Part shown: piece by piece, positions 2,259 to 51,583 of the stretch
How positions within the stretch are numbered: the first letter of the stretch is position 1
Layout: each line of letters starts with the position of its first letter
Virus record (IMG/VR): IMGVR_UViG_3300045974_000132
Span: 62,001 to 126,000 of that record
Reading direction: 5' to 3' (one strand)
Length of the DNA stretch: 64,000 nucleotides
The notes under the pieces: model-generated
Database searches by the model: none
Told to the model about the DNA's origin: nothing
What the model saw: the letters and a program-made list of their open reading frames with translations, nothing else
Program-made: the position numbers and the translations under genes

Positions 2259-2567
2259 TTAAAAGAAACTAGGTTGAGCAATAGAACGAGTAAGAGCCAT
2301 TAAGCCTTCTTGGAAATGCGTCTTACTGATGGATGCCCAACGCTCAGGCTCTGCGTCTTTCAATCGACTATCTTCCTCAGCAGCATCTTCAAACAACTTA
2401 CCTGAAGCTAGTCCCTTAACATGCTCCCTTTGTTTTGCAATATGCTTCTGCGCTTCTAAAATCAAAGCTTCTAGTTCCAAGCCTTTATCCTTGATAGCAT
2501 TCATCAGATCAATTTCAGCTTGGCTTAGTTCACGGTAGCCGCGAATCTTACGGTGTTGATTTTCCAT
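2259..2567 (-). CDS. acb2: anti-CBASS cyclic-oligonucleotide sponge Acb2 (T4 Vs.4 family)
   Basis: MENQHRKIRGYRELSQAEIDLMNAIK...EPERWASISKTHFQEGLMALTRSIAQP closely matches the Pseudomonas phage Acb2 sequence as recalled; Y11 and K26 are in register. Confidence 0.9.
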   Translation of the reverse strand: MENQHRKIRGYRELSQAEIDLMNAIKDKGLELEALILEAQKHIAKQREHVKGLASGKLFEDAAEEDSRLKDAEPERWASISKTHFQEGLMALTRSIAQPSFF

Positions 2568-2589
2568 TTGTATTAACTCTTTCTAGTAT

Positions 2590-3300
2590 TTAACGGTCAA
2601 AATAGGGTTTGTATTTAGGTGATCTTATTTTAATAATGTTGGTCGGGTACTCCCGACTTATATCAAAGAAGGATTTACCGTAACCTTTCTGCACTACACG
2701 GCTTTTATAACTAGTGCGTTCAACATTACCAAACCACTTGCTACTATCGCAACCTTTAGTCGAAGCACACAACCTACGATCTTGCATCATACCACCTGCA
2801 CCACCGTTGTACGAATTGAAGAAGAAGGCAGAATGCTCAACAGGATCAGGTGCACCTGCAATCTTTCCATATTCAAACTTATCACGTACAACTACTGCTA
2901 GTGCTTGCTTATCTGGATCATACCTTTTATCAAAAGACCAGTTAGCTAAATCTCGATCTAGCTTCCTAACATCATTGAAAGCGTTGAATCGTTCCTTACC
3001 GTTCTTGTCGTAAGCAACCGTTAGCTGGCCGAGGCCGAATCCATATTCCCTGCTTGTCTTTAATTCAACTGTTTCAGACCAGCAGTGGGGAGCTTTTAAA
3101 CTGACGCAGGTTTCTTGTTCTACTTGAGCCGAAATATACCAGGGAGTCTCATAAGTAGGCCACTTATCCGCAAGATGCTTTTTTAGCAGAGGTAGATTCT
3201 TTTCAGCGTGTATAGGAAGCTTAGGTAGAGCAGCAACTTGTTCTGCACTAAAAGCATTTGCTGTCAGGCAGATCGCTAATAGAGCAAGAAGAGATTTCAT
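2590..3300 (-). CDS. endolysin, SLT-type lytic transglycosylase with N-terminal signal peptide
   Basis: AQVEQET (catalytic Glu), GFGLGQLT, SYNGG. Probable start MKSLLALLAICLTANAFSA at 3300, ATGA-coupled to the upstream holin stop. Confidence 0.85.
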   Translation of the reverse strand: MKSLLALLAICLTANAFSAEQVAALPKLPIHAEKNLPLLKKHLADKWPTYETPWYISAQVEQETCVSLKAPHCWSETVELKTSREYGFGLGQLTVAYDKNGKERFNAFNDVRKLDRDLANWSFDKRYDPDKQALAVVVRDKFEYGKIAGAPDPVEHSAFFFNSYNGGAGGMMQDRRLCASTKGCDSSKWFGNVERTSYKSRVVQKGYGKSFFDISREYPTNIIKIRSPKYKPYFDR

Positions 3301-3641
3301 TTTAGACCGATCAGTTGAGAAGCCGTAAAGAACAAGGTGCACATGAAGAACACAATAGATGCGAATACTACCGCTGAAGCCATAGGGCTTGCTTTAGCAT
3401 TGACTGCTAGTTCATCAAGACCTATATGCGGAAAGAAAATCCGACGCATCAAATGCACACCGATACCGAATAGCGCGATAACACCGATGAAATAAATGAC
3501 AACCTGACTAGCATCCCACATGGGAATAAGGGCAAGTAGGGCTAGCAGCCCTAGAAACATATGACGGTAAACATCTTTACGAACTTTAGTACCGTTAATG
3601 CTTGTGCTGATGTGGGCAATTTCATCTTGGAAAAAAGACAT
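3297..3641 (-). CDS. putative holin (3 TM segments)
   Basis: 114 aa with three hydrophobic stretches; translationally coupled to the endolysin. Confidence 0.65.
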   Translation of the reverse strand: MSFFQDEIAHISTSINGTKVRKDVYRHMFLGLLALLALIPMWDASQVVIYFIGVIALFGIGVHLMRRIFFPHIGLDELAVNAKASPMASAVVFASIVFFMCTLFFTASQLIGLK

Positions 3642-3686
3642 GGTAAGTTCCTTCGTAGTAAATTGTGAATACTTTGTTACTGTAAT

Positions 3687-3692
3687 AAATTA
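3687..3692 (-). promoter_or_regulatory. TAATTT candidate late-promoter element for the lysis cassette
   Basis: Lies between the terminator at 3713-3748 and the holin start at 3641; motif recurs in many intergenic gaps. Confidence 0.45.
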
Positions 3693-3712
3693 GAATACTC
3701 ATTCTGCGGACG

Positions 3713-3748
3713 AAAAAATACCCAGTAAATCCGAAGACGTACTGGGTA
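3713..3748 (-). terminator. rho-independent terminator
   Basis: TACCCAGTA/TACTGGGTA 9-bp stem, loop containing cUUCGg, then TTTTTT on the minus strand. Confidence 0.85.
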
Positions 3749-3761
3749 GGGTAGAACAATA

Positions 3762-4694: not shown

Positions 4695-4710
4695 TATGTA
4701 TCCTTATGTA

Positions 4711-5181: not shown

Positions 5182-5193
5182 GAAAATAATCCT

Positions 5194-5742
5194 TTACGAA
5201 ACACGCTGCATCAATAAGCTACCGCCTGGTATGAAACCACGACATTGCCAAGTACCTGCCATAACGACAGGTGCTACAGACCACCACCAAGCATTGGAGT
5301 AGGTGCTAGTCACAAAGCTTGCAGAATTACCTACTTCATAAAGTGTGAAGTTTATATCTTTTGTTATTGCTACTAAATATGCACCGTACAATATAGAACC
5401 GAAAGTTAATGCTTGTGGGATATTATATTGAGCATTTGAAGAATCGTAAAATATATTATTGCCATTACCGTCATCTTGCCCAAAGACAGTAACAAATGAT
5501 CCGACTCCTCCGAAGCCTGCGGATGCTGCTCCGGCGGGCCCGGCTGGCCCAGTGGCTCCAGCGGGGCCTGTTGGTCCGACTGGGCCTTGGCTACCCGAAC
5601 CGCTACCCCCTGATCCTGCTGGTCCTTGTGGTCCAGTTGGACCCACGGGACCTACACTACCTGATCCACTTCCACTTGAGCCTAAAGCACTCAAGTCTAC
5701 TGATTTAGAAGTACCGTCTGAAAAGTCAATAATTAAAAACAT
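5194..5742 (-). CDS. short collagen-like fibre protein
   Basis: Gly-X-Y repeats; C-terminal GGVGSF...AGTWQCRG...LLMQRVS fibre-tip motif. Confidence 0.7.
   Translation of the reverse strand: MFLIIDFSDGTSKSVDLSALGSSGSGSGSVGPVGPTGPQGPAGSGGSGSGSQGPVGPTGPAGATGPAGPAGAASAGFGGVGSFVTVFGQDDGNGNNIFYDSSNAQYNIPQALTFGSILYGAYLVAITKDINFTLYEVGNSASFVTSTYSNAWWWSVAPVVMAGTWQCRGFIPGGSLLMQRVS
5530..5662 (-). repeat. collagen-like (GXY)n tract, GC-rich
   Basis: GPVGPTGPQGPAG and GPVGPTGPAGATGPAGPAG. Confidence 0.8.
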
Positions 5743-5758
5743 ATGCCTACCCCTCTGA

Positions 5759-8837: not shown

Positions 8838-8850
8838 AGTAGTCTACCTT

Positions 8851-17444: not shown

Positions 17445-17485
17445 TTTGACTCCCTTTTACTTCATCTAAATTAGCACTTTCATTT

Positions 17486-33714: not shown

Positions 33715-33796
33715 TTTACTTGAAGTAAGAAAGGTGTGGGACACCTTTTGAGCATCCCACACTTCTTATACAAGTAAATTAGTATTTCTACTAATT
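33715..33796 (-). terminator. two hairpins after the capsid gene (terminator and/or RBS-control structure)
   Basis: AATTAGTA-GAAA-TACTAATT, then long stem TTTACTTG..AAGAAGTGTGGGA / TCCCACAC..TTCTT..CAAGTAAA. Confidence 0.6.
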
Positions 33797-35666: not shown

Positions 35667-37574
35667 TTACCGAGCGCGACGGCCGAGAGAGGAAACAGCA
35701 CGATGGATTTTTTGCATACCTACAGTATCTTCAGTAGAGACAGACACCTCAGTATTTGCACCGGGCTTCTGCTCAGTCGAAACAGAAGTACCCATGCCTG
35801 CTAAACGGCTCTCGATGGAATCAGAAGGTTGTGCAGAAGAAACCGCCTGATAGTTTGTACCGAGAATAGTCTTTGCGAGGCTTTCTTGCACTTCAGAAGG
35901 CTTACTAACAATGTCATTTGCTTGAGCAAACAGCACTGAGTGATAAGCATCTGCGTGTGCCTTGAACGCATTGTCGATAACGACTTCCGGATTACGTACG
36001 CCGGCACTCGACATTGCATTCCAAAGAGCGGACTTGAGAGGATTCTGGACGCCAGCAAAGAAGCCACGGTTGATACCGATAGCAGCAGTTGCCATAGCAG
36101 CCATAAACTTCTCTTGATGGCCCTTAATTTCAGCAGAAAGAGCAGCACGTTGTTCGGAGACTTGCGAATCCACTAAACGGCGAACTTCCTTAGAGACAGA
36201 AACCTTATGCTTGATCGGAGCAAAGCCGAGTTCAGCAAGAGCCTTCTTGATACCCGAGACCTTAGCGGTTGCCAGAGCAGCATGACCGAAAGACGGAGTA
36301 TCGAAAATATCAGCATTCTTACCAGCAGTAGCAGCGCGTGCCATTGCAATAGGAACACCCTTGTGGTATGCAGTCCAAGCAGCACAACCAGCAACCGTAG
36401 AGCTATAGCTTACGTCGAGGTCATCAGCAGAGGCACTTTCATCCAAGTCAGAATCAGCCGCGATTTCTTCGGTATCTTCACCGAGTTCATCACCTTCATC
36501 TTCAGAGCTATCATCGAGAACTGACAAAGCATTACCCTCATCTTCTTCATCTTCAGAAGCGTCATCCGATTCATCATCGCCGGAAGTTGATTTATCTGCA
36601 TCGCTAGATTCAGCAGCAGCAGCGTCTTCCTCACCAGCATCTTCAGAACCTTCATCTTCTTCAGCAGCGCCTTCGTCTGTGCCTTCTTCAGCAGCAGCAT
36701 CGTCGCCTTCGCCTTCATCTTCAGTAGAAGCATCTTCAACGTTGTCACCAGGAACTTCACCGTCGCCCAGGTCTTCTGACTTAGAGACAGTAACCTTAGT
36801 AGCGACAGCTTCTTCAACCGGCTTTTCGCTGAGGTCGATTTCACCAGCAACATCTTCAGAAGGTTCTTGAACTTCGCTCAAGCAAATCGGGCACTCTGAA
36901 ACGTTCTTATCCGAAAGGATGTGAACACCGCAGCCAGCAGAACTACATACAACGTACTGGGTCTTAACCTTAGTACCGCTGGACATAGAAGACAGCTTTT
37001 TGTGGGCAGAGAAAACGCGCATAGCTTCCTTGAATGAAGAAGAAACAACTACTGAAGAGTCTTCGTCTTCGTCGTCTTCTGCATCATCTTCTTCCGAAGA
37101 ATCGTCATCTTCTTCCTCGTCATCTGATTCATCATCATCTGATTCGGAAGCAATGTCTTCATCTTCGTCGGTATCTACATCACCCAGGTCATCTTCATCT
37201 TCATCACCGTCACATTCAGTGGCTAGAGCAGAAGTGCACTGCGGGCAATACTTAACCAGGGATTCACTGTCAAACACAACGTGGGCACCGCAACCAGACG
37301 AGCAAACCAGGTGGTTCGCTTCGATGTCCGCGCTGGAATTAGAAGCGAATTCCAGGGTATCGAGAATTTGGTTATCAGTTTCCAGGTCCATGTCACCAGT
37401 GCTTGGATTGAACATCTGTTCAGCATGACTGGCATGTGTAACGAAGGCTAACTTCCCATCATTACTCACTTGTGCAACCGCGCCCTTGCCCATGGCGAGC
37501 AACCGATACTTATTAATAGCATCGGTTTTAGAACGGCCCACTGCCAGGATGCCGTGAAATTCAGCTTTAGGCAT
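35667..37574 (-). CDS. prohead scaffold/core protein, acidic, with two Zn-finger-like motifs
   Basis: Long D/E tracts; CSS.GCG.H...CP.C twice; probable start MPKAEF at 37574 with AGGAG RBS. Confidence 0.65.
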   Translation of the reverse strand: MPKAEFHGILAVGRSKTDAINKYRLLAMGKGAVAQVSNDGKLAFVTHASHAEQMFNPSTGDMDLETDNQILDTLEFASNSSADIEANHLVCSSGCGAHVVFDSESLVKYCPQCTSALATECDGDEDEDDLGDVDTDEDEDIASESDDDESDDEEEDDDSSEEDDAEDDEDEDSSVVVSSSFKEAMRVFSAHKKLSSMSSGTKVKTQYVVCSSAGCGVHILSDKNVSECPICLSEVQEPSEDVAGEIDLSEKPVEEAVATKVTVSKSEDLGDGEVPGDNVEDASTEDEGEGDDAAAEEGTDEGAAEEDEGSEDAGEEDAAAAESSDADKSTSGDDESDDASEDEEDEGNALSVLDDSSEDEGDELGEDTEEIAADSDLDESASADDLDVSYSSTVAGCAAWTAYHKGVPIAMARAATAGKNADIFDTPSFGHAALATAKVSGIKKALAELGFAPIKHKVSVSKEVRRLVDSQVSEQRAALSAEIKGHQEKFMAAMATAAIGINRGFFAGVQNPLKSALWNAMSSAGVRNPEVVIDNAFKAHADAYHSVLFAQANDIVSKPSEVQESLAKTILGTNYQAVSSAQPSDSIESRLAGMGTSVSTEQKPGANTEVSVSTEDTVGMQKIHRAVSSLGRRAR

Positions 37575-37690
37575 ACTTTTGGCTCCTGTTAATTGTTGAA
37601 ACGAACGTGCAATTTCAAACACGTACAAATAAATTATGGTATTCAGAAATTGCGCTAGACCTACAAAACCTACAAACTACCAATCTACTA

Positions 37691-38185
37691 CTAAAACTGC
37701 ATATCCCGCACCTTTAATCTATTAAAGGCAAGAACATGTTTTTCCCGGTGTACATATTGGGTACTATGGTGTGCCCATTGGTGCATCTTTTCATCAGGGA
37801 CATCTAGGTTTAACGCTATTGTCACATGAGGTACGTAATCCGGATATCTATGCTTTGCACCCCTTTGGAGAAACAAGGAATGAACATGCTTAAATATGGG
37901 TGAATCCAAGATAAATACAGCAATTCCTTTACCGTTTTGCTTCCAATACTCAACCCTAGCAATCTTAGTGAACACCGGCGCCTTAGGATACGGTATTCGG
38001 AGAGTGCGTAAAGCATTATCAGAGCATACAGCTGTTACATGAGAGGTATAAGGAACACTATGGGTTGCGAAAGGTGGATGGGTATACCATACCAGTCCTG
38101 TTAGTAAGTGAGTTGTCCGGTAGTCAGGCGTAAAATGTGCATACACTCCCTTTGTACCGGTATAGTGTTTTGTACATATACGCAT
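37691..38185 (-). CDS. acb1: 2H phosphoesterase, Acb1 / T4 gp57B-like (paralogue 1)
   Basis: GVYA, HVTAVCS, LDSP...H...GAKHRYPDYVPHVTIA: two HxT motifs with Acb1 spacing. Confidence 0.7.
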   Translation of the reverse strand: MRICTKHYTGTKGVYAHFTPDYRTTHLLTGLVWYTHPPFATHSVPYTSHVTAVCSDNALRTLRIPYPKAPVFTKIARVEYWKQNGKGIAVFILDSPIFKHVHSLFLQRGAKHRYPDYVPHVTIALNLDVPDEKMHQWAHHSTQYVHREKHVLAFNRLKVRDMQF

Positions 38186-38207: not shown

Positions 38208-38241
38208 AAAAAAAGGAGTATACCTTTCGATATACTCCTTC
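38208..38241 (-). terminator. rho-independent terminator
   Basis: AAGGAGTATA/TATACTCCTT stem, GAAA-containing loop, T7 tail. Confidence 0.85.
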
Positions 38242-38268
38242 TAAATTATGTTGCACAGATTTTGAGAA

Positions 38269-38664
38269 CTACCGATAGTTACTTCGGCGTCGATCATTCA
38301 CAATAGGACGGTCAGAAGCACGCCTATCTCTACCTACCTGTCGTTTATTCCGGCGGGTAGTAAACCGTTTAAATGCCCAAACAGCACCTAGAAGTAATAG
38401 AACTATTGTCCCAAAGAACATACATATAGGAGGCATAGGTGGGCAATCTTCATCATCAAAGGTTTTTATATATCCTTCAAATCCGAACATAGAATACCAA
38501 GGATACCTTAGCTTATCCGGGGGAACATAATGAGTACGTTTATTAGTACGCGGATCATAGTGGAGAACATGGGGCATACACCAATGCGAAGAACGCCTAA
38601 ATTCAACGTACCCACCTATCTCATTCCATTGATCTAAAGCATAATACAAACATTGAGTTGCCAT
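38269..38664 (-). CDS. hypothetical membrane protein with Arg-rich tail
   Basis: One TM segment (MFFGTIVLLLLGAVWAF), then RRASDR/DRRR tail. Confidence 0.6.
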   Translation of the reverse strand: MATQCLYYALDQWNEIGGYVEFRRSSHWCMPHVLHYDPRTNKRTHYVPPDKLRYPWYSMFGFEGYIKTFDDEDCPPMPPICMFFGTIVLLLLGAVWAFKRFTTRRNKRQVGRDRRASDRPIVNDRRRSNYR

Positions 38665-38673
38665 TTTAATCCT

Positions 38674-39810
38674 TTACAGCTTTCTAGGATCGAGCAAGTG
38701 TGGGCCAATAGCGGACACAAAAGCAGGCGTGTTAACAACCGAGCATTCAAAGCCCTTTGCATCATGGCACTTACGGAAAGCCAAACGTCCATCTGCTTGC
38801 TTATACGTAGGACGACCCATTTGGGTATGCTTGCAAGGGGATAAGTTAATACCCTTACCGACTACTTGGTTGCAGATAGAACACGAATACGAGGTATAGT
38901 AGAAGCCTACTGAATACGCATTCTGCTGACGGGTAAGGATTTGATCTACGAGTAAGCTATCCTTAGTACGGTCAAACGCCATAAGAAGAACAATCTTGTA
39001 GTAATTCGGATTGAACTTAATAGGACGTAAGAATGACTCAAGAATTACACCCTTGGCTTTCAACAGATTCTTGTTGTCGTGTTCCTGGTGGGTAGGCTGA
39101 CCCTTGAAGGTCTTGTACATCTGCATACCGTATTCAGGTTTGAACGACAGCATTTCCCTCAGTGAAAGTGAATCACCGTTGGTGTTGGGTAATCCGCTGA
39201 AGATTGCAGGTATAGGGACAAGAATATAATCCCTAATATCGCGGCTAATATCGTAATGCTCCGCAGCATACGGAAGCCAGTAGTTGCAATCGAGGATACG
39301 CTCAGAGTGCCCAGTGCCAGAAATCTGGGCCGAAAGTGGTAGTTCATTTGTGCCTTGTGCTAGTTTATCTAATGGTATGGGATTAAGGCCTAAACCAAAG
39401 CTTTGACTCAGCATCCCTGTAGAGGAACTAGCTAAAGCCAGTTTGTCTAAACTCCTACATAATGAAGTATCAATCCCACCTTTAATAGCGTTAGGATTTT
39501 GACCATCACTAAGAAGAGGATATCCTGTACCTGGGTTACCTGCGCCTAAGTAGGGCACGCTGGGATCATAATGCCCATGCGGTACATCAGCATTAGGATT
39601 GATAGGTTCTTCTGAGCCAATCTCACCAACATCTTCAGGATTGGCTACTTGGTCAAGTTGCTTGAACTCAAAGTAGTCACCAATTTGGGTAAGAACACCG
39701 ACAGGATTACCTTGGAAAGCAACAGTCGTAAACTTGGAATTACTTTGCGGCATTAAAGAGTAACTATTACTCTTTGCCCACGTATGCGGGTCTTGAATTT
39801 GAACAGTCAT
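38674..39810 (-). CDS. prohead maturation protease (HK97/assemblin-type fold)
   Basis: PNTNGD, THQEHD (His), KGVI, YSVG (Ser), CSIC/C.H zinc insert, FECSVVNTPA. Confidence 0.7.
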   Translation of the reverse strand: MTVQIQDPHTWAKSNSYSLMPQSNSKFTTVAFQGNPVGVLTQIGDYFEFKQLDQVANPEDVGEIGSEEPINPNADVPHGHYDPSVPYLGAGNPGTGYPLLSDGQNPNAIKGGIDTSLCRSLDKLALASSSTGMLSQSFGLGLNPIPLDKLAQGTNELPLSAQISGTGHSERILDCNYWLPYAAEHYDISRDIRDYILVPIPAIFSGLPNTNGDSLSLREMLSFKPEYGMQMYKTFKGQPTHQEHDNKNLLKAKGVILESFLRPIKFNPNYYKIVLLMAFDRTKDSLLVDQILTRQQNAYSVGFYYTSYSCSICNQVVGKGINLSPCKHTQMGRPTYKQADGRLAFRKCHDAKGFECSVVNTPAFVSAIGPHLLDPRKL

Positions 39811-39842
39811 AGTACTTCCTTAATATAGGTCTTGCACATAAA

Positions 39843-40127
39843 TTAGCAAACCTCGTATTTATACTGTATGGAAATACCGTCAGGCGATCCTGACATGATA
39901 TGACCATCATACGCTCGGAAGTTATGTAGTGTTAGATTGCGCAACCAACCAATTTCAAGCTGTGACTTATCAAGCTCTGGGAAATTAGTTAGGTATAAAC
40001 GGGCACACCCTTTCTCAGGTATGTCAACGATTAGCTTTTCAGGGCGGCTTTTGAATTGTTGAAGTAAGGGATGCTCAAGAAACTCATCCCTTAGCTCTGC
40101 TATTATTTTAGGGGTCGGGAAGGCCAT
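39843..40127 (-). CDS. hypothetical protein
   Basis: ORF with AAGGA RBS. Confidence 0.6.
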   Translation of the reverse strand: MAFPTPKIIAELRDEFLEHPLLQQFKSRPEKLIVDIPEKGCARLYLTNFPELDKSQLEIGWLRNLTLHNFRAYDGHIMSGSPDGISIQYKYEVC

Positions 40128-40135: not shown

Positions 40136-41761
40136 TTAAATCTTAGGTATCCACTTCGGAACACGCAAGCCTAGGTTGTCAAAGAACTCTTTGAGAACGT
40201 TCGGTGAGATATACGCATTGATTGCAGTCATACCTGTAAGCTTCTGATTCTCACCGCTACCTACACGGTGATGAAGCATTTCGCCTACTTGCTTCATTTC
40301 CTCTTTAATCCATTTCTCAACACTGGCTTGACTAGGATGTTCAGACTTCTTGAAAGGCGCGCCGCTAAGAATCTTCAACGCGAGTTTAGTACCAGCTAAG
40401 TGGCGGAACTTATGAATCGTGATACCTGTAGGAACACCCAGGCTCTTCAGATACGCATTGACAGGAGCTGCACCTAGAGGCTTACTACGATTGGTGAACA
40501 CAACGTCAGTCGGCTTCTTACCCTTGATAAGTTCCCTGATGATTGCAATCACCTTACGGTTTGTTGCAGTCGTACCTAGTAAGATGTGATGCTGCTCAGT
40601 ACCCTTCTTACCAGTGTATTTGAATTCAAAGCCCTTGCTGATAGGAAGTAACTGCTTTACCAACAGCGTACTCATACCGTAACGATCTTCGCCTTCCATG
40701 TTCTTGCTATCACCGCCGATACGAGCTTGGGTTTGATAGATTGCTTCAACCAGAGCAGCAAGCACTTGGGTACGCGTATCAAGCGAGTCAAGATCCTTCA
40801 CCCACTTAGTACGGAACTTATCAACTTCCTTCATGAAGGAAGAGACTTTATCAAATCGTGCAGCTTTATTGCCTGAAGTAAATGCAACGGTACGAAGACG
40901 CTGTGCGACATTACCTACTAATGAACAAACATAGGTATTATCAGTCAAAGGGTCATACTTCGGGTTCATCTTCACTTCGCCGATAAGCATACCTGCAATT
41001 TGCTTGCCTGCTGTCGTGTATAAGCGGCCTTGTTCGTCAATGCTCCCTATAAAGCCTCTAGGGATGTAATTGCAACCTAAGGTATCTAGGTATTTACGAA
41101 CAATCTTAACGTCGATAAACGGCTTACCTGACGACCGGATGAACTTGAATAGATACTTCTTATAGTTGGCTACGAAGACTTTACGCAGTTCACTATAGCG
41201 TTCAACCAGTTTAACCTTACCCGGAAGCTCACGGAAGTCACGCATTTCATTGAGAGTCAGAATAGGATCATTCCGACGCCCAGTGAGTTGCAGTACCAAC
41301 TTAATCATTCCGCCTTCAGTAGCTTTATCACCTACTGCTGCTTCAACCTCTTCATCATCTGGAACGAAGTTTGTTGCAAGCTTTGAATCACCGGTGACTG
41401 CATAGATATTACGCGTGATGCGATTCCAGGCAGGCTCACTATCCTTACGATAGTACAGAAGGCAATCTTTAATCATCGCCAACTGTTCTTGGGAGATAGA
41501 AGTATCTGCTTGGAAATCAGCAACAGCTTCTTTCAGCCGGGCACTTGCATCTGCACCATCGTTCACCGTAAACTCCATGCGTGAGCGAATGAAGTTGTTG
41601 GTGATAGTAGTGAAGTCACGCAAGATTCCGAACTTCTTCAGAAAGGGTTGTGAAGCACTCACCCATTGCGTGAATTGAGCCTTTAGCGGCAACACATCTT
41701 TTTCTGTAAGGCTGAGAGCCATAACAGCCAAGCATTTAGTAAAGTTAATAACTGGATTCAT
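40136..41761 (-). CDS. DNA topoisomerase IB
   Basis: ARIG (Arg), YGMSTL, YTGKKG (Lys), VNAYLK, HKFRH (Arg), AINAYI (catalytic Tyr). Confidence 0.85.
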   Translation of the reverse strand: MNPVINFTKCLAVMALSLTEKDVLPLKAQFTQWVSASQPFLKKFGILRDFTTITNNFIRSRMEFTVNDGADASARLKEAVADFQADTSISQEQLAMIKDCLLYYRKDSEPAWNRITRNIYAVTGDSKLATNFVPDDEEVEAAVGDKATEGGMIKLVLQLTGRRNDPILTLNEMRDFRELPGKVKLVERYSELRKVFVANYKKYLFKFIRSSGKPFIDVKIVRKYLDTLGCNYIPRGFIGSIDEQGRLYTTAGKQIAGMLIGEVKMNPKYDPLTDNTYVCSLVGNVAQRLRTVAFTSGNKAARFDKVSSFMKEVDKFRTKWVKDLDSLDTRTQVLAALVEAIYQTQARIGGDSKNMEGEDRYGMSTLLVKQLLPISKGFEFKYTGKKGTEQHHILLGTTATNRKVIAIIRELIKGKKPTDVVFTNRSKPLGAAPVNAYLKSLGVPTGITIHKFRHLAGTKLALKILSGAPFKKSEHPSQASVEKWIKEEMKQVGEMLHHRVGSGENQKLTGMTAINAYISPNVLKEFFDNLGLRVPKWIPKI

Positions 41762-41815
41762 TTGTATCACCGGTATTTGTTATAAGCGTAGAGTGTGTAT
41801 AAATGCTCTTTACAC

Positions 41816-42044: not shown

Positions 42045-43940
42045 TTATGGGTGCTGGGCGGCTTGCCCAAAACGACGTAGATCAGATACATCAATCATAC
42101 TGCAAATTAAGCCTTCAAAGCCTTCATCGCCTACTAATGCGTGCTTGTAAAATATAACATCGCGCATTTCGTTTAGTTCAAAGTTCCATACCTGTTGTTC
42201 AATAACCGATATAGTGGATTCTAAACTACAGGATATCTCAATATCGTTATCCTTCTGTACTTGAAAGGCTTTTAGAGTGCGTTCTTCTATGCTCTCTAAA
42301 ATAGACTGCTTACTCGGATTTCCTATTGCTTGCTTCCGCACATAGGCAACTAGATCAGCGCGAGTTCTACCTACAAAGTCGGACTTAGATAAACCGTACC
42401 AACGAGCATATAGGTCATTGCACGTTATATACTTTAGGTCTTTGTCTTTGTAGAATACCGGTAGAGGACTGCTATCAAAGATGTGCTGATGGAAACGCTG
42501 TACTGCCCGAATATCTGAAATATTGGTCACTACTGCAACGATACCGTCAAACTTACCATCGACAGACCTAAGCACCGACCTATATACTACTACGTCAAGG
42601 ATGCTCTTTGTTACGCGGTTGTACACTTGAGATTCATACGACTGTGCGGTCTGCCCACTAGTGAGCATTTCAAAATCTTTTTGCCGGTAGAACTCAGTTA
42701 AGATACCAGCATTCTGAAGATCGTATGTAAGTATTTGTTCTCTGGTGCGTCCTACCACTTCATCAATAGGAATTCCTATCAGATTGCAATACTTATCGTT
42801 ACAACCCGCATACTTTAAATCTCGATCTAGGTAGTACACAGGAGCTGGAATACTACTCAACAGTGTTTCCTTAAACCGCTTCATAGACAAGAGGTCTGTC
42901 AGATCAACAAAGGTTGCAAGCACGCCTTTAAACTCTTGCGACTTACTACGCAGGGCTGTGCAATACATCATCACTTCCCGCACTTCCGTATTATCTAAAG
43001 TACGAAAGTCCAACTTGTGTATCTGAATATCCGGAGCATCTTGGTCTTTTAAATCGTCTTCGATGCTATTTATAGTCGATTCCAAGTCTTTAGGAAACAA
43101 GTCTGCATTGGTCTTACCGATGAAGTCCGACGGCTTCTTGTTGATAAACGCATCGAAGGCTTGATTACTACCGATGATCTTAAACGAAGAGTCCTTATAG
43201 AATACCGGATTAGGTAGAGCCGCCAGCAAACTTAGTTGGAACTGCGTCAAGGATTCAACTTCTGATATAGCAGCTACCTGCTCAGAAGTGTCACGAAAGA
43301 TAACAAGGAATATAATGTTGTCTGGGGTTTCACTATCTACATTCAAGATGTTCGCAAACATCTCCGCAGGTAGGATATTGCCGGATCGTGTAACACATGA
43401 AACCGACTTTTTCTTATTCAGGAATTCTGTTGAATTGCCTGTTACGTAGTCCCGGTATAAGTCACGATACTCAACCATCGTAGTAGGCCGCATACTGTCC
43501 ACATATGCGATATACCGTAAAGCTTCCTCTTTAAACAGAACCGCATAGTCCTGTGTAGAATTCGAGATAAGGAAGTTAACGGACTTCCCAATCAAATCTG
43601 TAGAGGTAAATCCAAGGATGCGCTCGGCTGTTTGATTTGTACTAACAATGAAACCGTTAGCATCAATACTGATAAGCGGGTCCATTAAGCTATCTGAAAT
43701 AAGGGATACGCGCATCTTAGCACGTTCCAGTTCAGAGGACATACGAGATACGATCTGTTTAGCTTGGTCACGGGTAGAGTTTATGTCTTCCTGTAATTCA
43801 AGATGGGTTTTATCAATGCGCTCTAAGTCTTCACGACGGAGCATTGGGCGCTGGATATCGCACATAGCCTGGACTACTTGCAGACTTACTGTGGATTCAG
43901 ACGGCTTCTTTTTAAAGATATTATCTAGCCATGCAAACAT
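42045..43940 (-). CDS. multi-PAS protein (coiled coil plus 4 PAS domains, no output domain)
   Basis: Four repeats of P.PVFYKD....N..F..(G)....IG+T...G.......D[ILV][ST]D; protein ends about 10 aa after the last PAS. Confidence 0.85.
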   Translation of the reverse strand: MFAWLDNIFKKKPSESTVSLQVVQAMCDIQRPMLRREDLERIDKTHLELQEDINSTRDQAKQIVSRMSSELERAKMRVSLISDSLMDPLISIDANGFIVSTNQTAERILGFTSTDLIGKSVNFLISNSTQDYAVLFKEEALRYIAYVDSMRPTTMVEYRDLYRDYVTGNSTEFLNKKKSVSCVTRSGNILPAEMFANILNVDSETPDNIIFLVIFRDTSEQVAAISEVESLTQFQLSLLAALPNPVFYKDSSFKIIGSNQAFDAFINKKPSDFIGKTNADLFPKDLESTINSIEDDLKDQDAPDIQIHKLDFRTLDNTEVREVMMYCTALRSKSQEFKGVLATFVDLTDLLSMKRFKETLLSSIPAPVYYLDRDLKYAGCNDKYCNLIGIPIDEVVGRTREQILTYDLQNAGILTEFYRQKDFEMLTSGQTAQSYESQVYNRVTKSILDVVVYRSVLRSVDGKFDGIVAVVTNISDIRAVQRFHQHIFDSSPLPVFYKDKDLKYITCNDLYARWYGLSKSDFVGRTRADLVAYVRKQAIGNPSKQSILESIEERTLKAFQVQKDNDIEISCSLESTISVIEQQVWNFELNEMRDVIFYKHALVGDEGFEGLICSMIDVSDLRRFGQAAQHP

Positions 43941-43942
43941 GA

Positions 43943-44269
43943 TTATACACCACGCTGACTTAAGGCTGAAATGGTACTCAGCACAGCCTTCACTTCATTA
44001 ATAGCTTCGCGGATACTGATTTGACTCTGATGGTATTTTTCAATAATACTTAGTAGCATTTCGCGTTCCTCACCTGTCTTTTGGTTCAAGGACGACTGGA
44101 GCTTTTCCATGGTTTCTTTGTACTCTTTTAGTTCTTCTTTATGCTCTTTCTTGGTTGTATAGTTCTGCCAAGCTAAGTAGCCTATAATGATTAATAGCAA
44201 GGGCATTACTCCGCCGCTATTACCTTGGCCGAGTAGGCTTACTACTAGTTTGTCTAAGAGTTCCATCAT
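43943..44269 (-). CDS. single-pass membrane protein with coiled coil
   Basis: TM segment MPLLLIIIGYLAW followed by a charged heptad region; 2 nt from the PAS gene. Confidence 0.7.
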   Translation of the reverse strand: MMELLDKLVVSLLGQGNSGGVMPLLLIIIGYLAWQNYTTKKEHKEELKEYKETMEKLQSSLNQKTGEEREMLLSIIEKYHQSQISIREAINEVKAVLSTISALSQRGV

Positions 44270-44312: not shown

Positions 44313-44345
44313 GTAACCCACTATTTTTACCGTAAGTACAAATGG

Positions 44346-44373
44346 AAAGAGCTACCCAAAAGGATAGCTCTTT
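44346..44373 (-). terminator. terminator hairpin
   Basis: AAAGAGCTA/TAGCTCTTT inverted repeat. Confidence 0.65.
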
Positions 44374-44382
44374 ATGCACAAC

Positions 44383-44775: not shown

Positions 44776-44822
44776 CCAAATATAATGTCTTTGAATAAGT
44801 TGACAACTACCTTACTAGACTT

Positions 44823-45344: not shown

Positions 45345-45345
45345 A

Positions 45346-46578: not shown

Positions 46579-46587
46579 GGTAAACCT

Positions 46588-46992: not shown

Positions 46993-47000
46993 ATAACACC

Positions 47001-49046: not shown

Positions 49047-49047
49047 A

Positions 49048-49359
49048 TCAGTCTGCCCGAATATTATTGTGAAGTCGATGCCCAGCCGGTGTTTTACAGC
49101 AGTTAGGATACTGCAATCCCGTTATACCGTTTACAGACATTGGATAGTAGATATTGTTACAGCTAGGACACATCCAAGCATATCCTGCACTGACTTTCAT
49201 ACCCCAATCACCTCTACCCGGTATAGCACCTCTACCCTCAGTGTATATAACACGATAGGTATAGCGATCATTGAAAGCTTTTGCAATAGCTTCTTTCTCA
49301 GAATTTTCAGCCCTTGCCTGTAACTTATTTTTTAGTTGTGTAAGCCAAGCTTTAATCAT
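49048..49359 (-). CDS. hypothetical Zn-ribbon protein
   Basis: WMCPSC...YPNCC. Confidence 0.6.
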   Translation of the reverse strand: MIKAWLTQLKNKLQARAENSEKEAIAKAFNDRYTYRVIYTEGRGAIPGRGDWGMKVSAGYAWMCPSCNNIYYPMSVNGITGLQYPNCCKTPAGHRLHNNIRAD

Positions 49360-49364
49360 TTGAG

Positions 49365-49730
49365 TCAGCCCTTAGGATATTCTTTTACGAAGGTGTTGTA
49401 CATTTTGATAGCCTGCTCACGTTCTTCCCTCAAAACGTTTAGGCCCTTCTCCTTACCAGCAGAAGTTTTAGCAGTGTAGAGTGCGATTATAGAACTTACC
49501 GTCTCCAATCTATCTACTACATTGCTTTTTGTTTCCTTCAAGTCAGCTACCCAATCAGGGTCTTGATAGTTGGTACGTATCTGTCGATCCAGGTCTGCTA
49601 TGTTAGACTTGTAAGTAGTCCGCAACTTATCGAGCAAGATCATAGGAAAAGGTTTAGGATTAACAGGCAGAGCGTCTGTTAAATAACCGTATTCACTTCT
49701 AGAAATAGATGTTTCAATAAGGAGTTGCAT
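49365..49730 (-). CDS. hypothetical helical protein with S-x-S leader
   Basis: Starts MQLLIETSISRS. Confidence 0.65.
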   Translation of the reverse strand: MQLLIETSISRSEYGYLTDALPVNPKPFPMILLDKLRTTYKSNIADLDRQIRTNYQDPDWVADLKETKSNVVDRLETVSSIIALYTAKTSAGKEKGLNVLREEREQAIKMYNTFVKEYPKG

Positions 49731-49739
49731 TTCTATTCC

Positions 49740-50384
49740 TTATACGTACCAATTAGAAGAGTATGAGAATACACGACCTGAAAACGGCTTGCCTGCAACA
49801 CGAACATTACCGTAAGTAGCGGTGTGCGATTTAGGCTTATCTGTTTCAATACCGTATTTTGTAGTTAGGTACTTTGCAAACTTGGAGAAGCTACGCTGAA
49901 GAAGCGGTGTAGCTGACCATCCCTCAACAGCTTCCTTACTAGAACAATACGCCCCTACAGAGATAGAGGTCTTAGTCATCTGATATACGACCACGATAGA
50001 TTCCGGTCGACGATCATATACCGTATTGAAAGCTATGCAAATTGTTTCATCTTTGAAAAAGCTACGAACCTCACTACCTTTTAAAGCAGTTATGATAGAG
50101 GCTGTATTCTTTACCAAAGCTTCTTCAATGTCTAGTCCATGCACATTGAGGAATTCAACTTGTTCTTTGAAAGAGTCACCTACGGCTGCTGCTAGCGACC
50201 TATCTTTTAACTCTTTGACAAGACGTTTATTAACGCCGTAAACTACACCGTCCTTGATTACACTAGGGCGGCCTTCGTACAGCGCAAGGCGGAAGATGTC
50301 ATTTTTGTGCAAAACCAATTCTTTTTGGCCAGACCTAAAACGAGCACCCTTATCCGCAGTGTAATATCTATAGGACGGTTTCAT
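49740..50384 (-). CDS. hypothetical protein
   Basis: N-terminal domain resembles those of 45346 and 50385 (L.L.K.D.F pattern). Confidence 0.65.
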   Translation of the reverse strand: MKPSYRYYTADKGARFRSGQKELVLHKNDIFRLALYEGRPSVIKDGVVYGVNKRLVKELKDRSLAAAVGDSFKEQVEFLNVHGLDIEEALVKNTASIITALKGSEVRSFFKDETICIAFNTVYDRRPESIVVVYQMTKTSISVGAYCSSKEAVEGWSATPLLQRSFSKFAKYLTTKYGIETDKPKSHTATYGNVRVAGKPFSGRVFSYSSNWYV

Positions 50385-51086
50385 TTAGATACCCGGCTTA
50401 ACTTCAGTGTCTTTGTCTTCGTCATCTTCCTTATCCTTAGATTCAGCACCCTCAGGTACGTCATCACCGATAGTAGGATCGACAAAACTGATACTAATCT
50501 TCTCTACACGAACGCCTGTGCTTTCAACCGTTTTATAGCGGCGGAACTCTTCAGGAATTTCATCGTCATTGAAGTCTTCAATTTCAGGAAGATGCAACTC
50601 TGATAACTTTACTTTTACAGTTCTAGGAGCATCTGGATTACCCGGCTTGGTAACGCCCGTCATCTTAGTCACTACTGCCTTACGCGGGTCTTTATGGACA
50701 ACAGCTGCCGGCTTGGGAGTAGAAACTTTAAGCATAGTACCTAGCTTAGTGATAGGTATTGCCTTTTGCTTAACAGGACTTGTAGGAGCCGCAGAGGACT
50801 TGCGAGTAGTAGGTTTTGCAGAAGTAAGAGTAGGTATCTTACCGTTATACTGCTTAGAAGCATTCATCAAGTTTTCAGACTTGGTGATCTTCAGTTGGAA
50901 CTTTGAACCGTCTTCTAAAACGATTTCATCGTATTCCTTATTACGCAGTTCCCGTACTCCGAATAAAGCTTTAGGGGCTAATACGTGCTTGTCACCCTTT
51001 TCAGATAGAACAGTGCGTGACTTGGCTCCTGCGTAACGCATCCAGTAATACTTAGCAGGATTAGCGGCTGAGATAGATATTTTCAT
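50385..51086 (-). CDS. hypothetical basic protein with S-x-S leader and acidic tail
   Basis: Starts MKISISAAN; K/P/T-rich middle; second KISIS just before the acidic tail. Confidence 0.65.
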   Translation of the reverse strand: MKISISAANPAKYYWMRYAGAKSRTVLSEKGDKHVLAPKALFGVRELRNKEYDEIVLEDGSKFQLKITKSENLMNASKQYNGKIPTLTSAKPTTRKSSAAPTSPVKQKAIPITKLGTMLKVSTPKPAAVVHKDPRKAVVTKMTGVTKPGNPDAPRTVKVKLSELHLPEIEDFNDDEIPEEFRRYKTVESTGVRVEKISISFVDPTIGDDVPEGAESKDKEDDEDKDTEVKPGI

Positions 51087-51088
51087 AG

Positions 51089-51583
51089 TCAGTCCTTAAT
51101 GTCTTCAACCTGTTCACCCGTAAGAGTGATCTCAAATTTCAGGGAAGATAACATGCGGTTAAGCTTTGCAAAGCACTTAGGCTTATCACCGATTTTGTCG
51201 GCAAGTGTAATGTGCGCTTCATAGTCTGGGAAGCTATGCTGACAACCTAGATCAACGTATTGCTCATGGCGAATAGCAAGATCGCGTGAATTAAGTTGAA
51301 GCACAAGATACCCTGCATTGTCATGACCCGGCCAGTAGGATAGCTTGTCGGACCACGCTTTGAATGTGAACGGTCCTGCATTCAATAGTTTGGTTACGCG
51401 AATGCTGTGAGGAGCTTCCTCTTTACTGTACATAATCGTGCAGTGTAGATCCGCTTCCTCATATGTCTTAACACCCTCTGCTTGAAGTTCTTCATTGAGG
51501 GCACTCATTAGCTGGCTAAATCCTTTTACAGGCATAACGCAGCTATATAGTCCAGACTTACCTGTGTATGTTGCTTTCTTCAT
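51089..51583 (-). CDS. acb1: 2H phosphoesterase, Acb1 / T4 gp57B-like (paralogue 2)
   Basis: GLY, LHCTIMYS, LVLQLNS..L..RH....LGCQHSFPDYEAHITLA. Confidence 0.85.
   Translation of the reverse strand: MKKATYTGKSGLYSCVMPVKGFSQLMSALNEELQAEGVKTYEEADLHCTIMYSKEEAPHSIRVTKLLNAGPFTFKAWSDKLSYWPGHDNAGYLVLQLNSRDLAIRHEQYVDLGCQHSFPDYEAHITLADKIGDKPKCFAKLNRMLSSLKFEITLTGEQVEDIKD

What the first reader, a model, noticed from the sequence alone, without database searches (positions are those of the whole stretch)
2259..51583. Three anti-CBASS genes (Acb2 sponge plus two divergent Acb1 nucleases), all inside late/structural operons
Seen: Acb2 at 2259-2567 lies right after the endolysin; Acb1-like genes lie at 37691-38185 (between protease and scaffold) and 51089-51583 (two genes after the portal). 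Established: Acb1 (2H phosphoesterase) degrades, and Acb2 sequesters, cyclic oligonucleotides; capsid and protease functions have been implicated in CBASS activation. Inference: placement beside head genes times counter-defence to the trigger. Paralogue 1 is divergent (HVTAVCS, basic and His-rich) and may have a different substrate.
Basis: partly seen in the sequence, partly recalled or inferred. Interest (0 to 1): 0.6.

Follow-up and report, generated by a model that had tools for sequence, protein, structure and literature searches.

The report
Jumbo phage carries three anti-CBASS genes
A 286-kb pond jumbo phage encodes one Acb2 signal sponge and two distantly related Acb1 signal-cutting enzymes among its head and lysis genes; one of them belongs to an unstudied basic subfamily that always sits next to the head protease, the enzyme recently reported to trigger the bacterial CBASS alarm.

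Summary
All three ORFs exist on the minus strand and pass Pfam's curated cut-offs. Acb2 (2259-2567) is a full-length relative of the solved PaMx33 Acb2 and keeps both ligand pockets. Acb1-B (51089-51583) and Acb1-A (37691-38185) keep the HxT/HxT tetrad and the Tyr/Trp stacking residues. Both fold like BCSR5 PDE-9 and FBB1 Acb1, not like LigT.

They are not recent duplicates. Acb1-B is on the T4/PaBG side of the family. Acb1-A belongs to a small, uniformly basic clade (pI 9.2-10.1).

All three positions are conserved in uncultivated relatives. Acb1-A stays between the prohead protease and the scaffold gene down to 33% identity, and one close relative has lost it. It is preceded by a promoter-like motif and a covarying hairpin. 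A genome-wide motif (CTAATTTA) that precedes structural and lysis genes heads each unit, so late expression is plausible but has no RNA support.

The link to a protease trigger fits a 2026 preprint but remains an inference. Both families are known, and T4 already carries both. What is new is the double Acb1 set and the basic, protease-linked subfamily.

The parts
2259..2567 (-). Acb2 cyclic-oligonucleotide sponge, 102 aa
   Evidence: PF24729 at 61 bits. Full-length match to PaMx33 Acb2 (8h2j), E 5e-21. Keeps Y11 and K26, R76 (=R67), T83 (=T74) and the E73-P74 kink. Position conserved in L042-L044.
2590..3342 (-). Endolysin with an N-terminal signal or SAR-like segment. The start is uncertain and is probably the internal ATG near 3315.
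   Evidence: phrog_669 endolysin, E 2.6e-13. Orthologues are 241-244 aa and overlap or abut Acb2.
3297..3641 (-). 114-aa membrane protein, holin-like, first gene of the lysis unit
   Evidence: Hydrophobic segments in the translation. Conserved as 114 aa in L042. The function is inferred.
3686..3694 (-). M1 motif TCTAATTTA, candidate late promoter of the holin-like/endolysin/Acb2 unit
   Evidence: Genome-wide motif enriched about 12-fold in intergenic DNA.
37691..38185 (-). Acb1-A, 164 aa, member of the basic Acb1 subfamily
   Evidence: PF23474 at 38.7 bits. H49/T51/H120/T122, Y15, W81 and Y114 present. AF2 pLDDT 85.7; top fold match is BCSR5 PDE-9, TM 0.82-0.85. pI 9.81. Basic clade supported at 96/95.
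38208..38240 (-). Conserved 12-bp hairpin with a GAAA-type loop and a 7-T run, terminator-like, 25 nt upstream of the Acb1-A ATG
   Evidence: 6 of 12 pairs change on both sides across relatives, and 0 of 500 shuffles reach the covariation score. Absent from the relative that lacks Acb1-A.
38242..38253 (-). Conserved motif CAACATAATTTA, a variant of M1, directly before the hairpin
   Evidence: Identical in the window, L007, L010 and L040; CAAAGTAATTTA in L046.
37630..37639 (-). Variant M1 motif CCATAATTTA, about 55 nt upstream of the probable scaffold ATG (37574)
   Evidence: Canonical TCTAATTTA at the same place in L040.
38269..38664 (-). 131-aa membrane protein between the protease and Acb1-A; variable slot; function unknown
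   Evidence: No family hit. Not homologous to PaBG gp259. 126-129-aa genes or nothing at this place in relatives.
38674..39810 (-). Head maturation (prohead) protease, preceded by M1 GCTAATTTA at 39839-39847
   Evidence: phrog_18299, E 5.5e-82. Homologues in PaBG, Lu11, HRDY3, BcepSauron and BCSR5. Motif.
35667..37574 (-). Acidic scaffold-like protein. The ORF opens at TTG 37628, but ATG 37574 behind a conserved AACAGGAGCC is the likelier start.
   Evidence: phrog_20988. Conserved as 607-655 aa next to a 231-aa virion protein and the MCP in all relatives.
51089..51583 (-). Acb1-B, 164 aa, on the T4/PaBG side of the Acb1 family
   Evidence: PF23474 at 73 bits. H47/T49/H124/T126, Y13, W84 and F118 present. 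AF2 pLDDT 90.1; top fold matches are PDE-9 (TM 0.75-0.79) and FBB1 Acb1. Follows the portal in L012-L014, L040 and L049.
51580..52143 (-). 187-aa gene of unknown function, a lineage-variable insert between the portal and Acb1-B, with ATGA overlaps on both sides
   Evidence: Absent in L012-L014, 168 aa in L049. No family or atlas lead.
52140..53999 (-). Portal protein. The unit is headed by M1 ACTAATTTA at 54237-54245 and a 67-aa ORF.
   Evidence: phrog_16240, E 3e-200. Motif.

Best explanation
The phage carries a three-part defence against host cyclic-oligonucleotide immune signalling, mainly CBASS.

Acb2 most likely forms the known hexameric sponge. It would hold cyclic dinucleotides in the Y11/K26 pockets and cyclic trinucleotides in the R/T pockets.

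Acb1-B and Acb1-A are 2H phosphodiesterases. They most likely clamp the bases of a cyclic oligonucleotide between a conserved Tyr and Trp and cut a 3'-5' bond through the HxT/HxT tetrad, which linearises the signal. They come from two old subfamilies. That is a plausible way to widen or split substrate coverage, as shown for T4 Acb1 and PDE-9.

All three genes sit in conserved positions inside morphogenesis or lysis units. Each unit is headed by the phage's CTAATTTA motif, probably its late promoter. The proteins would therefore be made when the prohead protease and capsid proteins, the reported CBASS triggers, appear.

Shown here: gene identity, conserved residues, folds, synteny, motif distribution, the hairpin, and purifying selection. 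Inferred: the activities, the substrates, late timing, and any selective link to the protease.
For: Family and structure matches.

Acb2 pocket residues: Y11, K26, R76, T83 and the E-P kink (one search read with PMC10312549).

Acb1 residues: tetrad, Tyr and Trp invariant in 17 and then 55 sequences.

Not LigT.

Purifying selection: dN/dS 0.09-0.21.

Conserved positions: Acb1-A in L007-L011, L046 and L048; Acb1-B in L012-L014, L040 and L049; Acb2 in L042-L044. Both Acb1 genes occur on one contig in L049.

Translational coupling: ATGA overlaps for portal/187-aa/Acb1-B. Acb2 overlaps or abuts the endolysin gene in relatives.

M1 motif: about 12-fold enriched in intergenic DNA. It precedes the tail sheath, a tail-fibre-like gene, the protease, the portal unit and the lysis unit. 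The M2 motif precedes SSB and MazG.

Literature: the prohead protease activates CD-NTases late in infection (PMC12991175). PDE-9 and T4 Acb1 differ in substrate range (Doherty 2025).
Against: There is no biochemical or expression data for this phage, and only DNA runs exist.

Both Acb1 proteins lack the C-terminal W147 lid of T4/FBB1 Acb1. Their N-termini are shorter than the N-terminal lid of PDE-9, so catalytic efficiency is uncertain.

A conserved terminator-like hairpin lies between the protease unit and Acb1-A.

M1 also precedes several homing endonucleases and a DNA-polymerase fragment, so calling it 'late' is not proven.

Acb1-A is dispensable, since it is lost in L040.

The closest cultured relatives, Lu11 and HRDY3, have no Acb1. 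In BcepSauron and BCSR5 the Acb1-type gene is more than 50 kb from the protease.

The host is unknown, and so is whether it has CBASS.
Confidence: 0.7

Rival explanations
1. Acb1-A is an active 2H phosphodiesterase, but CBASS dinucleotides are not its main substrate. Its conserved positive charge would suit larger or more anionic targets. Candidates are cA4 or cA6 from type III CRISPR, linear 2'-5' oligoadenylates, or RNA ends with a 2',3'-cyclic phosphate. Acb1-A would then complement Acb1-B and Acb2 and not duplicate them.
For: The whole subfamily is basic, pI 9.2-10.1 in 13 of 13 members, while nearly all other family members are acidic or neutral. It is a separate clade with 96/95 support and a distinct C-terminal motif, FNRxK[IV][RQ]D. 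Doherty 2025 shows that 2H PDE structural groups differ widely in substrate and that some cleave nothing on an 18-compound panel.
Against: The tetrad and both base-stacking residues are kept. The best fold match is the cGAMP-cleaving PDE-9, TM 0.82-0.85. No residue-level specificity argument holds up, because the E141 mapping changes with the alignment.
Confidence: 0.25
2. The positions carry no functional meaning. The interval after the protease, the interval after the portal and the end of the lysis cassette are simply tolerated insertion slots for accessory genes. The synteny is inherited, not selected.
For: The protease-scaffold interval is variable. It holds 4 small unrelated genes in Lu11 and 3 in HRDY3, variable 126-131-aa genes elsewhere, and Acb1-A is lost in L040. 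A 187- or 168-aa gene comes and goes next to Acb1-B. Hobbs 2022 already used nearness to structural genes to class Acb1 homologues as prophage-borne, so the pattern is common. In T4-like phages acb1 follows 57A and is far from gene 21. The linkage amounts to one or two independent events.
Against: Acb1-A keeps its slot from 67% down to 33% identity (MCP 57%), while neighbouring small genes turn over. PaBG has an acidic, B-like Acb1 two genes after its protease, although that module is separated from the scaffold and MCP genes. A dedicated conserved motif plus hairpin travels with the gene.
Confidence: 0.35
3. Acb1-A is packaged into the head as a basic internal protein and injected with the DNA, like T4 IPI. 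That would provide anti-signalling activity from the first minute of infection.
For: It is encoded between the protease and the scaffold, it has a conserved high pI, and it evolves fast.
Against: There is no cleavable N-terminal targeting peptide. The N-terminus (MR[IV]C..YTGTKGVY) is part of the conserved enzyme core. No virion proteomics evidence was found for PaBG's counterpart. If CBASS fires late, early delivery is not needed.
Confidence: 0.07
4. The two 2H proteins are LigT/ThpR-type RNA-repair or 2',3'-cyclic phosphodiesterase enzymes unrelated to immune signalling, as many database annotations ('RNA ligase') imply.
For: phrog_755 is labelled 'RNA ligase'. Acb1-B just passes PF13563, at 28.3 bits against a cut-off of 27, through an off-register half-domain match.
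Against: Acb1 model scores are far higher, 73 and 38.7 bits. TIGR02258 gives 18.9 bits against a 65.7-bit cut-off for Acb1-B and no hit for Acb1-A. LigT structures reach TM about 0.5 against 0.75-0.85 for PDE-9. The 'RNA ligase' label in PHROGs predates the discovery of Acb1, and T4 57B itself carries it.
Confidence: 0.05

Closest known systems
Acb2 of Pseudomonas phage PaMx33 (p26; PDB 8h2j, 8ixz) and JBD67
   Same: Full-length homologue (E 5e-21) and about 49-54% identical to the best Pseudomonas and Aeromonas phage homologues, including JBD67. It has the same Y11/K26 dinucleotide pocket and the same R67/T74 trinucleotide pocket with the E64-P65 kink.
   Different: It has 9 extra residues in the loop between helices (102 aa against 93). 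It is encoded in a 286-kb lytic-type jumbo phage directly behind the endolysin. Binding and hexamer formation were not tested.
2H PDE-9 of Burkholderia jumbo phage BCSR5 (PDB 9Q2G, 9Q2Y; Doherty et al. 2025)
   Same: Best structural match of both paralogues: TM 0.82-0.85 for Acb1-A and 0.75-0.79 for Acb1-B. Same length class (164-165 aa). No C-terminal Trp lid. Same tetrad, Tyr and Trp. It comes from a jumbo phage with a related MCP and protease.
   Different: Only 20-23% identical. PDE-9 forms a separate clade (100/99) from both paralogues in the 55-sequence tree. The PDE-9 lid is residues 1-15 ahead of Y19, whereas the stacking Tyr here is Y15 (A) or Y13 (B). PDE-9 is acidic (pI 5.1), and its gene lies more than 50 kb from the protease.
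Acb1 of phages T4 (gene 57B) and FBB1 (PDB 7T26, 7T27; Hobbs et al. 2022)
   Same: Same Pfam family. HxT/HxT tetrad (H44, T46, H113, T115) and stacking residues Y12, W74 and F107 have counterparts. Acb1-B falls on the same side of the tree. T4 also pairs Acb1 with Acb2.
   Different: The C-terminal lid (residues 145-152, W147) is absent in both paralogues. TM is only 0.6-0.75. T4 has a single Acb1, placed after 57A and not next to gene 21.
PaBG gp258 ('putative RNA ligase LigT')
   Same: An Acb1-family gene (54 bits) placed two genes after the head maturation protease, the same order as in the window.
   Different: It is acidic (pI 5.15) and groups with distant Acb1-B-like sequences, not with the basic clade. 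The small tree could not reject A+PaBG (p 0.19). The intervening gene is unrelated. PaBG has only this one copy.

Membership tests
Acb2 (anti-CBASS sponge) | Acb2/Tad1 hairpin domain and full-length similarity to a solved Acb2 | tested here: met
   PF24729 at 61 bits against a cut-off of 27. 8h2j E 5.2e-21 over residues 1-102 against 1-93. No Tad1 chain matched at E<=1.
Acb2 (anti-CBASS sponge) | Cyclic-dinucleotide pocket residues Y11 and K26 | tested here: met
   Both are identical in the HMMER alignment. Their roles are from PMC10312549.
Acb2 (anti-CBASS sponge) | Cyclic-trinucleotide pocket R67 and T74 with the helix kink at E64 | tested here: met
   AEPERW...SKT aligns with AEPGRW...GKT, giving R76, T83 and E73-P74.
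Acb2 (anti-CBASS sponge) | Hexamer formation and nanomolar binding of cGAMP and cA3 | not testable with these tools
   Needs ITC or native gels. No complex prediction was run.
Acb1 (anti-CBASS 2H phosphodiesterase) | Match to the Acb1 family model above its curated cut-off | tested here: met
   PF23474: Acb1-B 73 bits and Acb1-A 38.7 bits, cut-off 27. Also found by six-frame search of the genome.
Acb1 (anti-CBASS 2H phosphodiesterase) | Catalytic HxT/HxT tetrad (H44, T46, H113, T115) | tested here: met
   A: H49, T51, H120, T122. B: H47, T49, H124, T126. The two His are invariant in all 55 aligned sequences; the Thr positions are T, or S in a few.
Acb1 (anti-CBASS 2H phosphodiesterase) | Base-stacking residues Y12, W74 and F107 | tested here: met
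   A: Y15, W81, Y114. B: Y13, W84, F118. The F107 position is F, Y or H across the family; it is H in PDE-9.
Acb1 (anti-CBASS 2H phosphodiesterase) | C-terminal lid, residues 145-152 with W147 | tested here: not met
   Both proteins end a few residues after the last strand and have no Trp there. The same is true of PDE-9, which is an active cGAMP phosphodiesterase with an N-terminal lid.
Acb1 (anti-CBASS 2H phosphodiesterase) | Adenine-N6 contact E141 | tested here: inconclusive
   One alignment puts E160 (B) and R160 (A) at this position. A larger alignment shifts T4's C-terminus by about 16 residues. An invariant Asp (D161) lies next to it.
Acb1 (anti-CBASS 2H phosphodiesterase) | 2H fold closest to solved Acb1-type enzymes | tested here: met
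   Top Foldseek hits are 9q2y/9q2g and then 7t26/7t27 for both models. LigT, Usb1 and CPDase come later, with TM about 0.5.
Acb1 (anti-CBASS 2H phosphodiesterase) | Cleavage of 3'3'-cGAMP, cUA or cA3 and rescue from CBASS | not testable with these tools
   Needs enzyme assays and plaque assays.
PDE-9-type Acb1 (N-terminal lid) | N-terminal lid of about 15 residues ahead of the stacking Tyr | tested here: inconclusive
   The Tyr is at position 19 in PDE-9, 15 in Acb1-A and 13 in Acb1-B. The N-termini of both models have low pLDDT.
LigT/ThpR RNA 2',3'-cyclic phosphodiesterase | Match to the curated equivalog or LigT models above cut-off | tested here: not met
   TIGR02258: Acb1-B 18.9 bits against a 65.7-bit cut-off, Acb1-A no hit. 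PF02834 is below its cut-off for both. PF13563 gives 28.3 bits against 27 for Acb1-B, but only through an off-register half-domain match.

The most novel reading that the evidence does not exclude
The basic Acb1-A subfamily is a dedicated partner of the prohead protease. It would be held next to the protease gene by selection because that protease is what switches on the host CD-NTase. It would be expressed through its own promoter-plus-hairpin cassette, and it would have a substrate range different from Acb1-B and Acb2, for example covering signals the sponge misses or sparing decoy nucleotides such as the one guarding Panoptes. That would make it a genetically hard-wired trigger-antidote module in a virus.
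Probability: 0.2. Interest if true: 0.7.

Novelty: new variant of a known kind. Interest (0 to 1): 0.45.

Why it matters
Acb1 and Acb2 are established counter-defences, and T4 is already known to need both. That part is ordinary.

Three things are worth a specialist's attention.

1. One phage lineage stably keeps two Acb1 enzymes from different subfamilies plus a dual-pocket Acb2. That gives a natural system for asking why breadth needs several proteins, especially now that Panoptes-type systems punish indiscriminate signal depletion.

2. The uncharacterised basic Acb1 subfamily has about 10 cluster representatives among 1.84 billion proteins. Its charge and C-terminal motif differ from every tested enzyme.

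3. That subfamily has persisted immediately downstream of the prohead protease, over divergence down to 33% identity. It appears here just as a preprint reports that prohead proteases are direct CBASS activators. The genomic pattern gives that model a testable prediction in a phage group unrelated to T4.

Tried and rejected
- Megablast of 20 kb against phage records found nothing.
- Word-pattern scans of viral contigs with either paralogue found nothing.
- Homology between the window's 131-aa membrane protein and PaBG gp259 was rejected, E 3.
- Protease adjacency in BcepSauron and BCSR5 was rejected. GenBank labels BcepSauron gp268 'prohead protease', but gp268 and BCSR5 QRE00329 hit no protease family, and the real protease homologues lie more than 50 kb away.
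- Acb1-A as sister of PDE-9 had 83/81 support in a 21-sequence tree. It was dropped after the 55-sequence tree separated them. AU tests on the small set could not reject A+PaBG (p 0.19) or A+B (p 0.10).
- The idea that Arg replaces the adenine-contact E141 in Acb1-A was dropped as alignment-dependent.
- CATAATTT as a promoter motif of its own was dropped. It has only 6 copies genome-wide and was reinterpreted as a variant of the enriched CTAATTTA motif.
- Sigma-70 consensus promoter counts were not above shuffled expectation in any of the three regions.
- RNA evidence: no RNA runs hold the sequence. Contigs from three pond metagenomes only confirmed presence.
- The PaBG paper says nothing about gp258 in virions.
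- The protein atlas gave no usable lead for the 187-aa or the 131-aa neighbour.
- The protease showed no sequence match to any solved structure, so its relation to T4 gp21 is untested.
- dS is saturated in most pairs, so the dN/dS values are rough.
- No complex prediction was run.

Full report
**Setting.** The window is bases 62001-126000 of a complete 286,393-bp virus record with direct terminal repeats. Nearly all genes in the window are on the minus strand, so transcription runs from high to low coordinates. By major capsid protein the phage is related to the Pseudomonas jumbo phages HRDY3 and Lu11 (57-58%) and PaBG (54%). It is more distantly related to Dickeya, Erwinia and Burkholderia jumbo phages. 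No near-identical record exists in the phage collection. The same sequence occurs in contigs from three pond-metagenome studies.

**Observation.**
- Acb2 (2259-2567): PF24729, 61 bits.
- Acb1-A (37691-38185): PF23474, 38.7 bits.
- Acb1-B (51089-51583): PF23474, 73 bits.

- The endolysin lies 22 nt upstream of Acb2.
- The head maturation protease (phrog_18299) lies upstream of Acb1-A and the acidic scaffold-like gene lies downstream, with a 131-aa membrane-protein gene in between.
- The portal lies two genes upstream of Acb1-B.

The genome has no other Acb1, Acb2, 2H or Tad2 gene.

**Acb2.** The protein aligns end to end with the solved PaMx33 Acb2 (E 5e-21). Using the residue roles from Cao et al. 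(PMC10312549), it keeps Y11 and K26 of the cyclic-dinucleotide pocket. It also keeps R67 and T74 (here R76 and T83) and the E64-P65 kink of the cyclic-trinucleotide pocket. T4 Acb2 lacks the trinucleotide pocket. The only clear difference from PaMx33 Acb2 is a 9-residue loop insertion. The family is large: 973 proteins at E<=1e-10 and 236 phage records. In three related contigs the order holin-like gene, endolysin, Acb2, small ORF, ~309-aa gene is kept, and there Acb2 overlaps or abuts the endolysin stop codon.

**The two Acb1 proteins: residues and fold.** Both keep the HxT/HxT tetrad and the Tyr and Trp that stack on the bases in FBB1 Acb1 (Hobbs 2022; mapping). Both His, the Tyr (one exception) and the Trp (two exceptions) are conserved across the 55 aligned family members, and the tetrad Thr is T or S. 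The AlphaFold models are confident, with pLDDT 85.7 and 90.1. Their best solved matches rank as follows.
- First, the phosphodiesterase of Burkholderia jumbo phage BCSR5, which is '2H PDE-9' of Doherty et al. 2025: TM 0.82-0.85 for Acb1-A and 0.75-0.79 for Acb1-B.
- Second, FBB1 Acb1.
- Far behind, LigT, Usb1 and plant CPDase, at TM about 0.5.

The curated LigT/ThpR equivalog is not met.

Both proteins lack the C-terminal W147 lid of T4/FBB1 Acb1, as PDE-9 does. Whether their short N-termini act as a PDE-9-type lid is unresolved.

**The two Acb1 proteins: relationships.** They are only about 26% identical over 123 residues. An exhaustive search with Acb1-A found intermediates that the word search had missed. 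In a 55-sequence tree Acb1-A belongs to a clade of 13 sequences (96/95 support). That clade is separate from the PDE-9 clade (100/99) and from the side of the tree that holds Acb1-B, T4-type Acb1 and PaBG gp258. An earlier small tree had joined Acb1-A to PDE-9 on a branch of about 3 substitutions per site. That join was not robust, and AU tests on the small set were indecisive.

Every member of the Acb1-A clade is basic (pI 9.2-10.1) and ends in FNRxK[IV][RQ]D. Almost all other members are acidic or neutral and mostly carry [IV]-E-D in that strand. I first read the Arg as a replacement of the adenine-contact residue E141. A second alignment moved T4's C-terminus, so I withdrew that claim. The strong His enrichment (15 His) is peculiar to this phage's copy; relatives have 7-11.

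**Conservation of position.**
- *Acb1-A.* It lies between the protease and the scaffold gene in every contig long enough to show context. These are L007-L009 (67% identity), L010 and L011 (54%), L046 (39%) and L048 (33%, where it abuts the protease gene).
- *Rate of change.* Identity to the window's flanking proteins in those contigs is 67-77% (L007, L010, L046) and 43-57% (L048). The MCP is 90-93% and 57% respectively. Acb1-A therefore changes faster than its neighbours and at uneven rates, yet stays under purifying selection, with dN/dS 0.12-0.21.
- *Loss in one relative.* L040 is closest to L007 (86-91% in core proteins). It has only a 244-nt gap at this place, with both flanking motifs kept, no hairpin and no remnant of the gene. 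Given the relationships, this is a loss, so the gene is dispensable.
- *Acb1-B.* It follows the portal in L012-L014, L040 and L049. The window's 187-aa gene between them is a variable insert.
- *Co-occurrence.* L049 carries both paralogues on one contig.
- *Cultured relatives.* PaBG, BcepSauron and BCSR5 have one Acb1-type gene each, and Lu11 and HRDY3 have none. PaBG's copy lies two genes after its protease. In the Burkholderia phages the Acb1-type gene is more than 50 kb from the protease.

**Transcription signals.** Sigma-70-type promoter matches are not above chance. An unbiased k-mer test on 146 oriented intergenic regions found two enriched motifs.
- [A/C/T]CTAATTTA, here called M1, enriched about 12-fold.
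- AAACTGTAAA, here called M2, enriched about 6-fold.

M1 lies 18-45 nt upstream of the start codons of most of these genes, among them the protease, the portal unit, the holin-like/endolysin/Acb2 unit, the tail sheath and a tail-fibre-like gene. It also precedes some homing endonucleases. M2 precedes SSB, a MazG-like gene and small unknown genes. By analogy with T4's TATAAATA, and given that PaBG encodes its own sigma factor, M1 is a reasonable late-promoter candidate. This is an inference.

Acb1-B is coupled to the portal gene by ATGA overlaps.

Acb1-A is different. The conserved motif CAACATAATTTA, a variant of M1, is followed directly by a 12-bp hairpin with a GAAA-type loop and seven T's, which ends 22 nt before the ATG. 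Across five relatives, 6 of 12 stem pairs change on both sides, and no shuffle reaches the observed covariation. A second M1-like motif follows Acb1-A, ahead of the scaffold gene. Acb1-A with its hairpin therefore looks like a small cassette between two promoter-like motifs. The hairpin could stop transcripts coming from the protease unit while transcripts that begin inside it escape, or it could be a 5' stabiliser. I cannot tell which.

**Interpretation.** The most likely reading is a three-part counter-defence against cyclic-oligonucleotide signalling. It would consist of a dual-pocket sponge and two phosphodiesterases from different subfamilies, all made with the morphogenesis and lysis genes. 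That timing would suit a defence that fires late. Hobbs & Kranzusch (PMC12991175) report that T4's prohead protease cleaves a CD-NTase loop and switches CBASS on from about 14 minutes. Doherty et al. show that close Acb1 relatives differ in which signals they cut. PDE-9 spares 2'3'-c-di-AMP and so avoids triggering Panoptes, which gives a rationale for carrying two enzymes.

There are limits to this reading. The protease linkage is one inherited arrangement plus possibly PaBG. The interval is a gene-turnover hot spot. Acb1 genes next to structural genes are common enough that Hobbs 2022 used that nearness as a classifying rule. The relation of this protease to T4 gp21 is untested. The host, its defences and all activities are unknown.

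**Verdict.** The families are known, and the Acb1-plus-Acb2 pairing is known from T4. The new elements are the stable double Acb1 set, the basic protease-linked subfamily with its conserved motif-hairpin cassette, and a candidate late-promoter motif for this phage group.

Noticed in passing
whole genome G000; in the window e.g. 54237-54245, 39839-39847, 33775-33783, 17467-17475, 3686-3694: Two intergenic motif classes. [A/C/T]CTAATTTA lies before structural and lysis genes and some homing endonucleases. AAACTGTAAA lies before SSB, MazG and small unknown genes, mostly outside the structural region. They are candidate late and early/middle promoters of this jumbo-phage group.
   Followed up: partly
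window 35667-37628: The scaffold-like gene is very acidic, with long D/E-rich low-complexity runs and CxxC pairs, and PHROGs labels it 'ATPase'. The ORF opens at TTG 37628, but ATG 37574 behind a conserved AACAGGAGCC is the likelier start. Its GAT/GAA-rich part attracts unrelated metagenome contigs (depth spike at 37040-37183).
   Followed up: partly
window 51580-52143: A 187-aa gene with no detectable relatives or confident fold is wedged between the portal and Acb1-B by ATGA overlaps. It is absent in three relatives, and a 168-aa gene stands there in another. Its position beside a counter-defence gene makes it a candidate accessory or anti-defence gene.
   Followed up: partly
window 38269-38664: A 131-aa protein with one membrane segment and a basic tail lies between the protease and Acb1-A. 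Its only hint is a sub-threshold match to the SAVED-fused 2TM effector domain (E 0.07). Relatives have unrelated or no genes at this place.
   Followed up: partly
L013 2392-5859 (relative) against window 54260-56494: The large terminase of one close relative is 1155 aa and carries an intein with a LAGLIDADG endonuclease. The window's TerL is 744 aa and other relatives have 726-729 aa.
   Followed up: no
window 40136-41770 and 42045-43940: A topoisomerase-IB/integrase-like gene (phrog_23460; PF01028 in relatives) and a large gene whose orthologues carry PAS sensor domains sit between the portal and protease regions of the head module. This is unusual content for a structural region.
   Followed up: no
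L004 5387-6031 (BcepSauron gp268): GenBank annotates this gene, next to the phage's Acb1-type gene, as 'prohead protease'. It hits no protease family, and the true homologue of the jumbo-phage protease lies at 43325-43948 of that genome.
   Followed up: yes
window 5194-5742: A 182-aa protein with collagen-like G-x-y repeats (GPTGPQGPAG...) among tail-fibre-like genes.
   Followed up: no
window 33734-33783: Directly after the major capsid gene, a canonical M1 motif is followed by a GC-rich hairpin. This is the same motif-then-hairpin order as upstream of Acb1-A, so the arrangement may be a general punctuation element of this phage.
   Followed up: no
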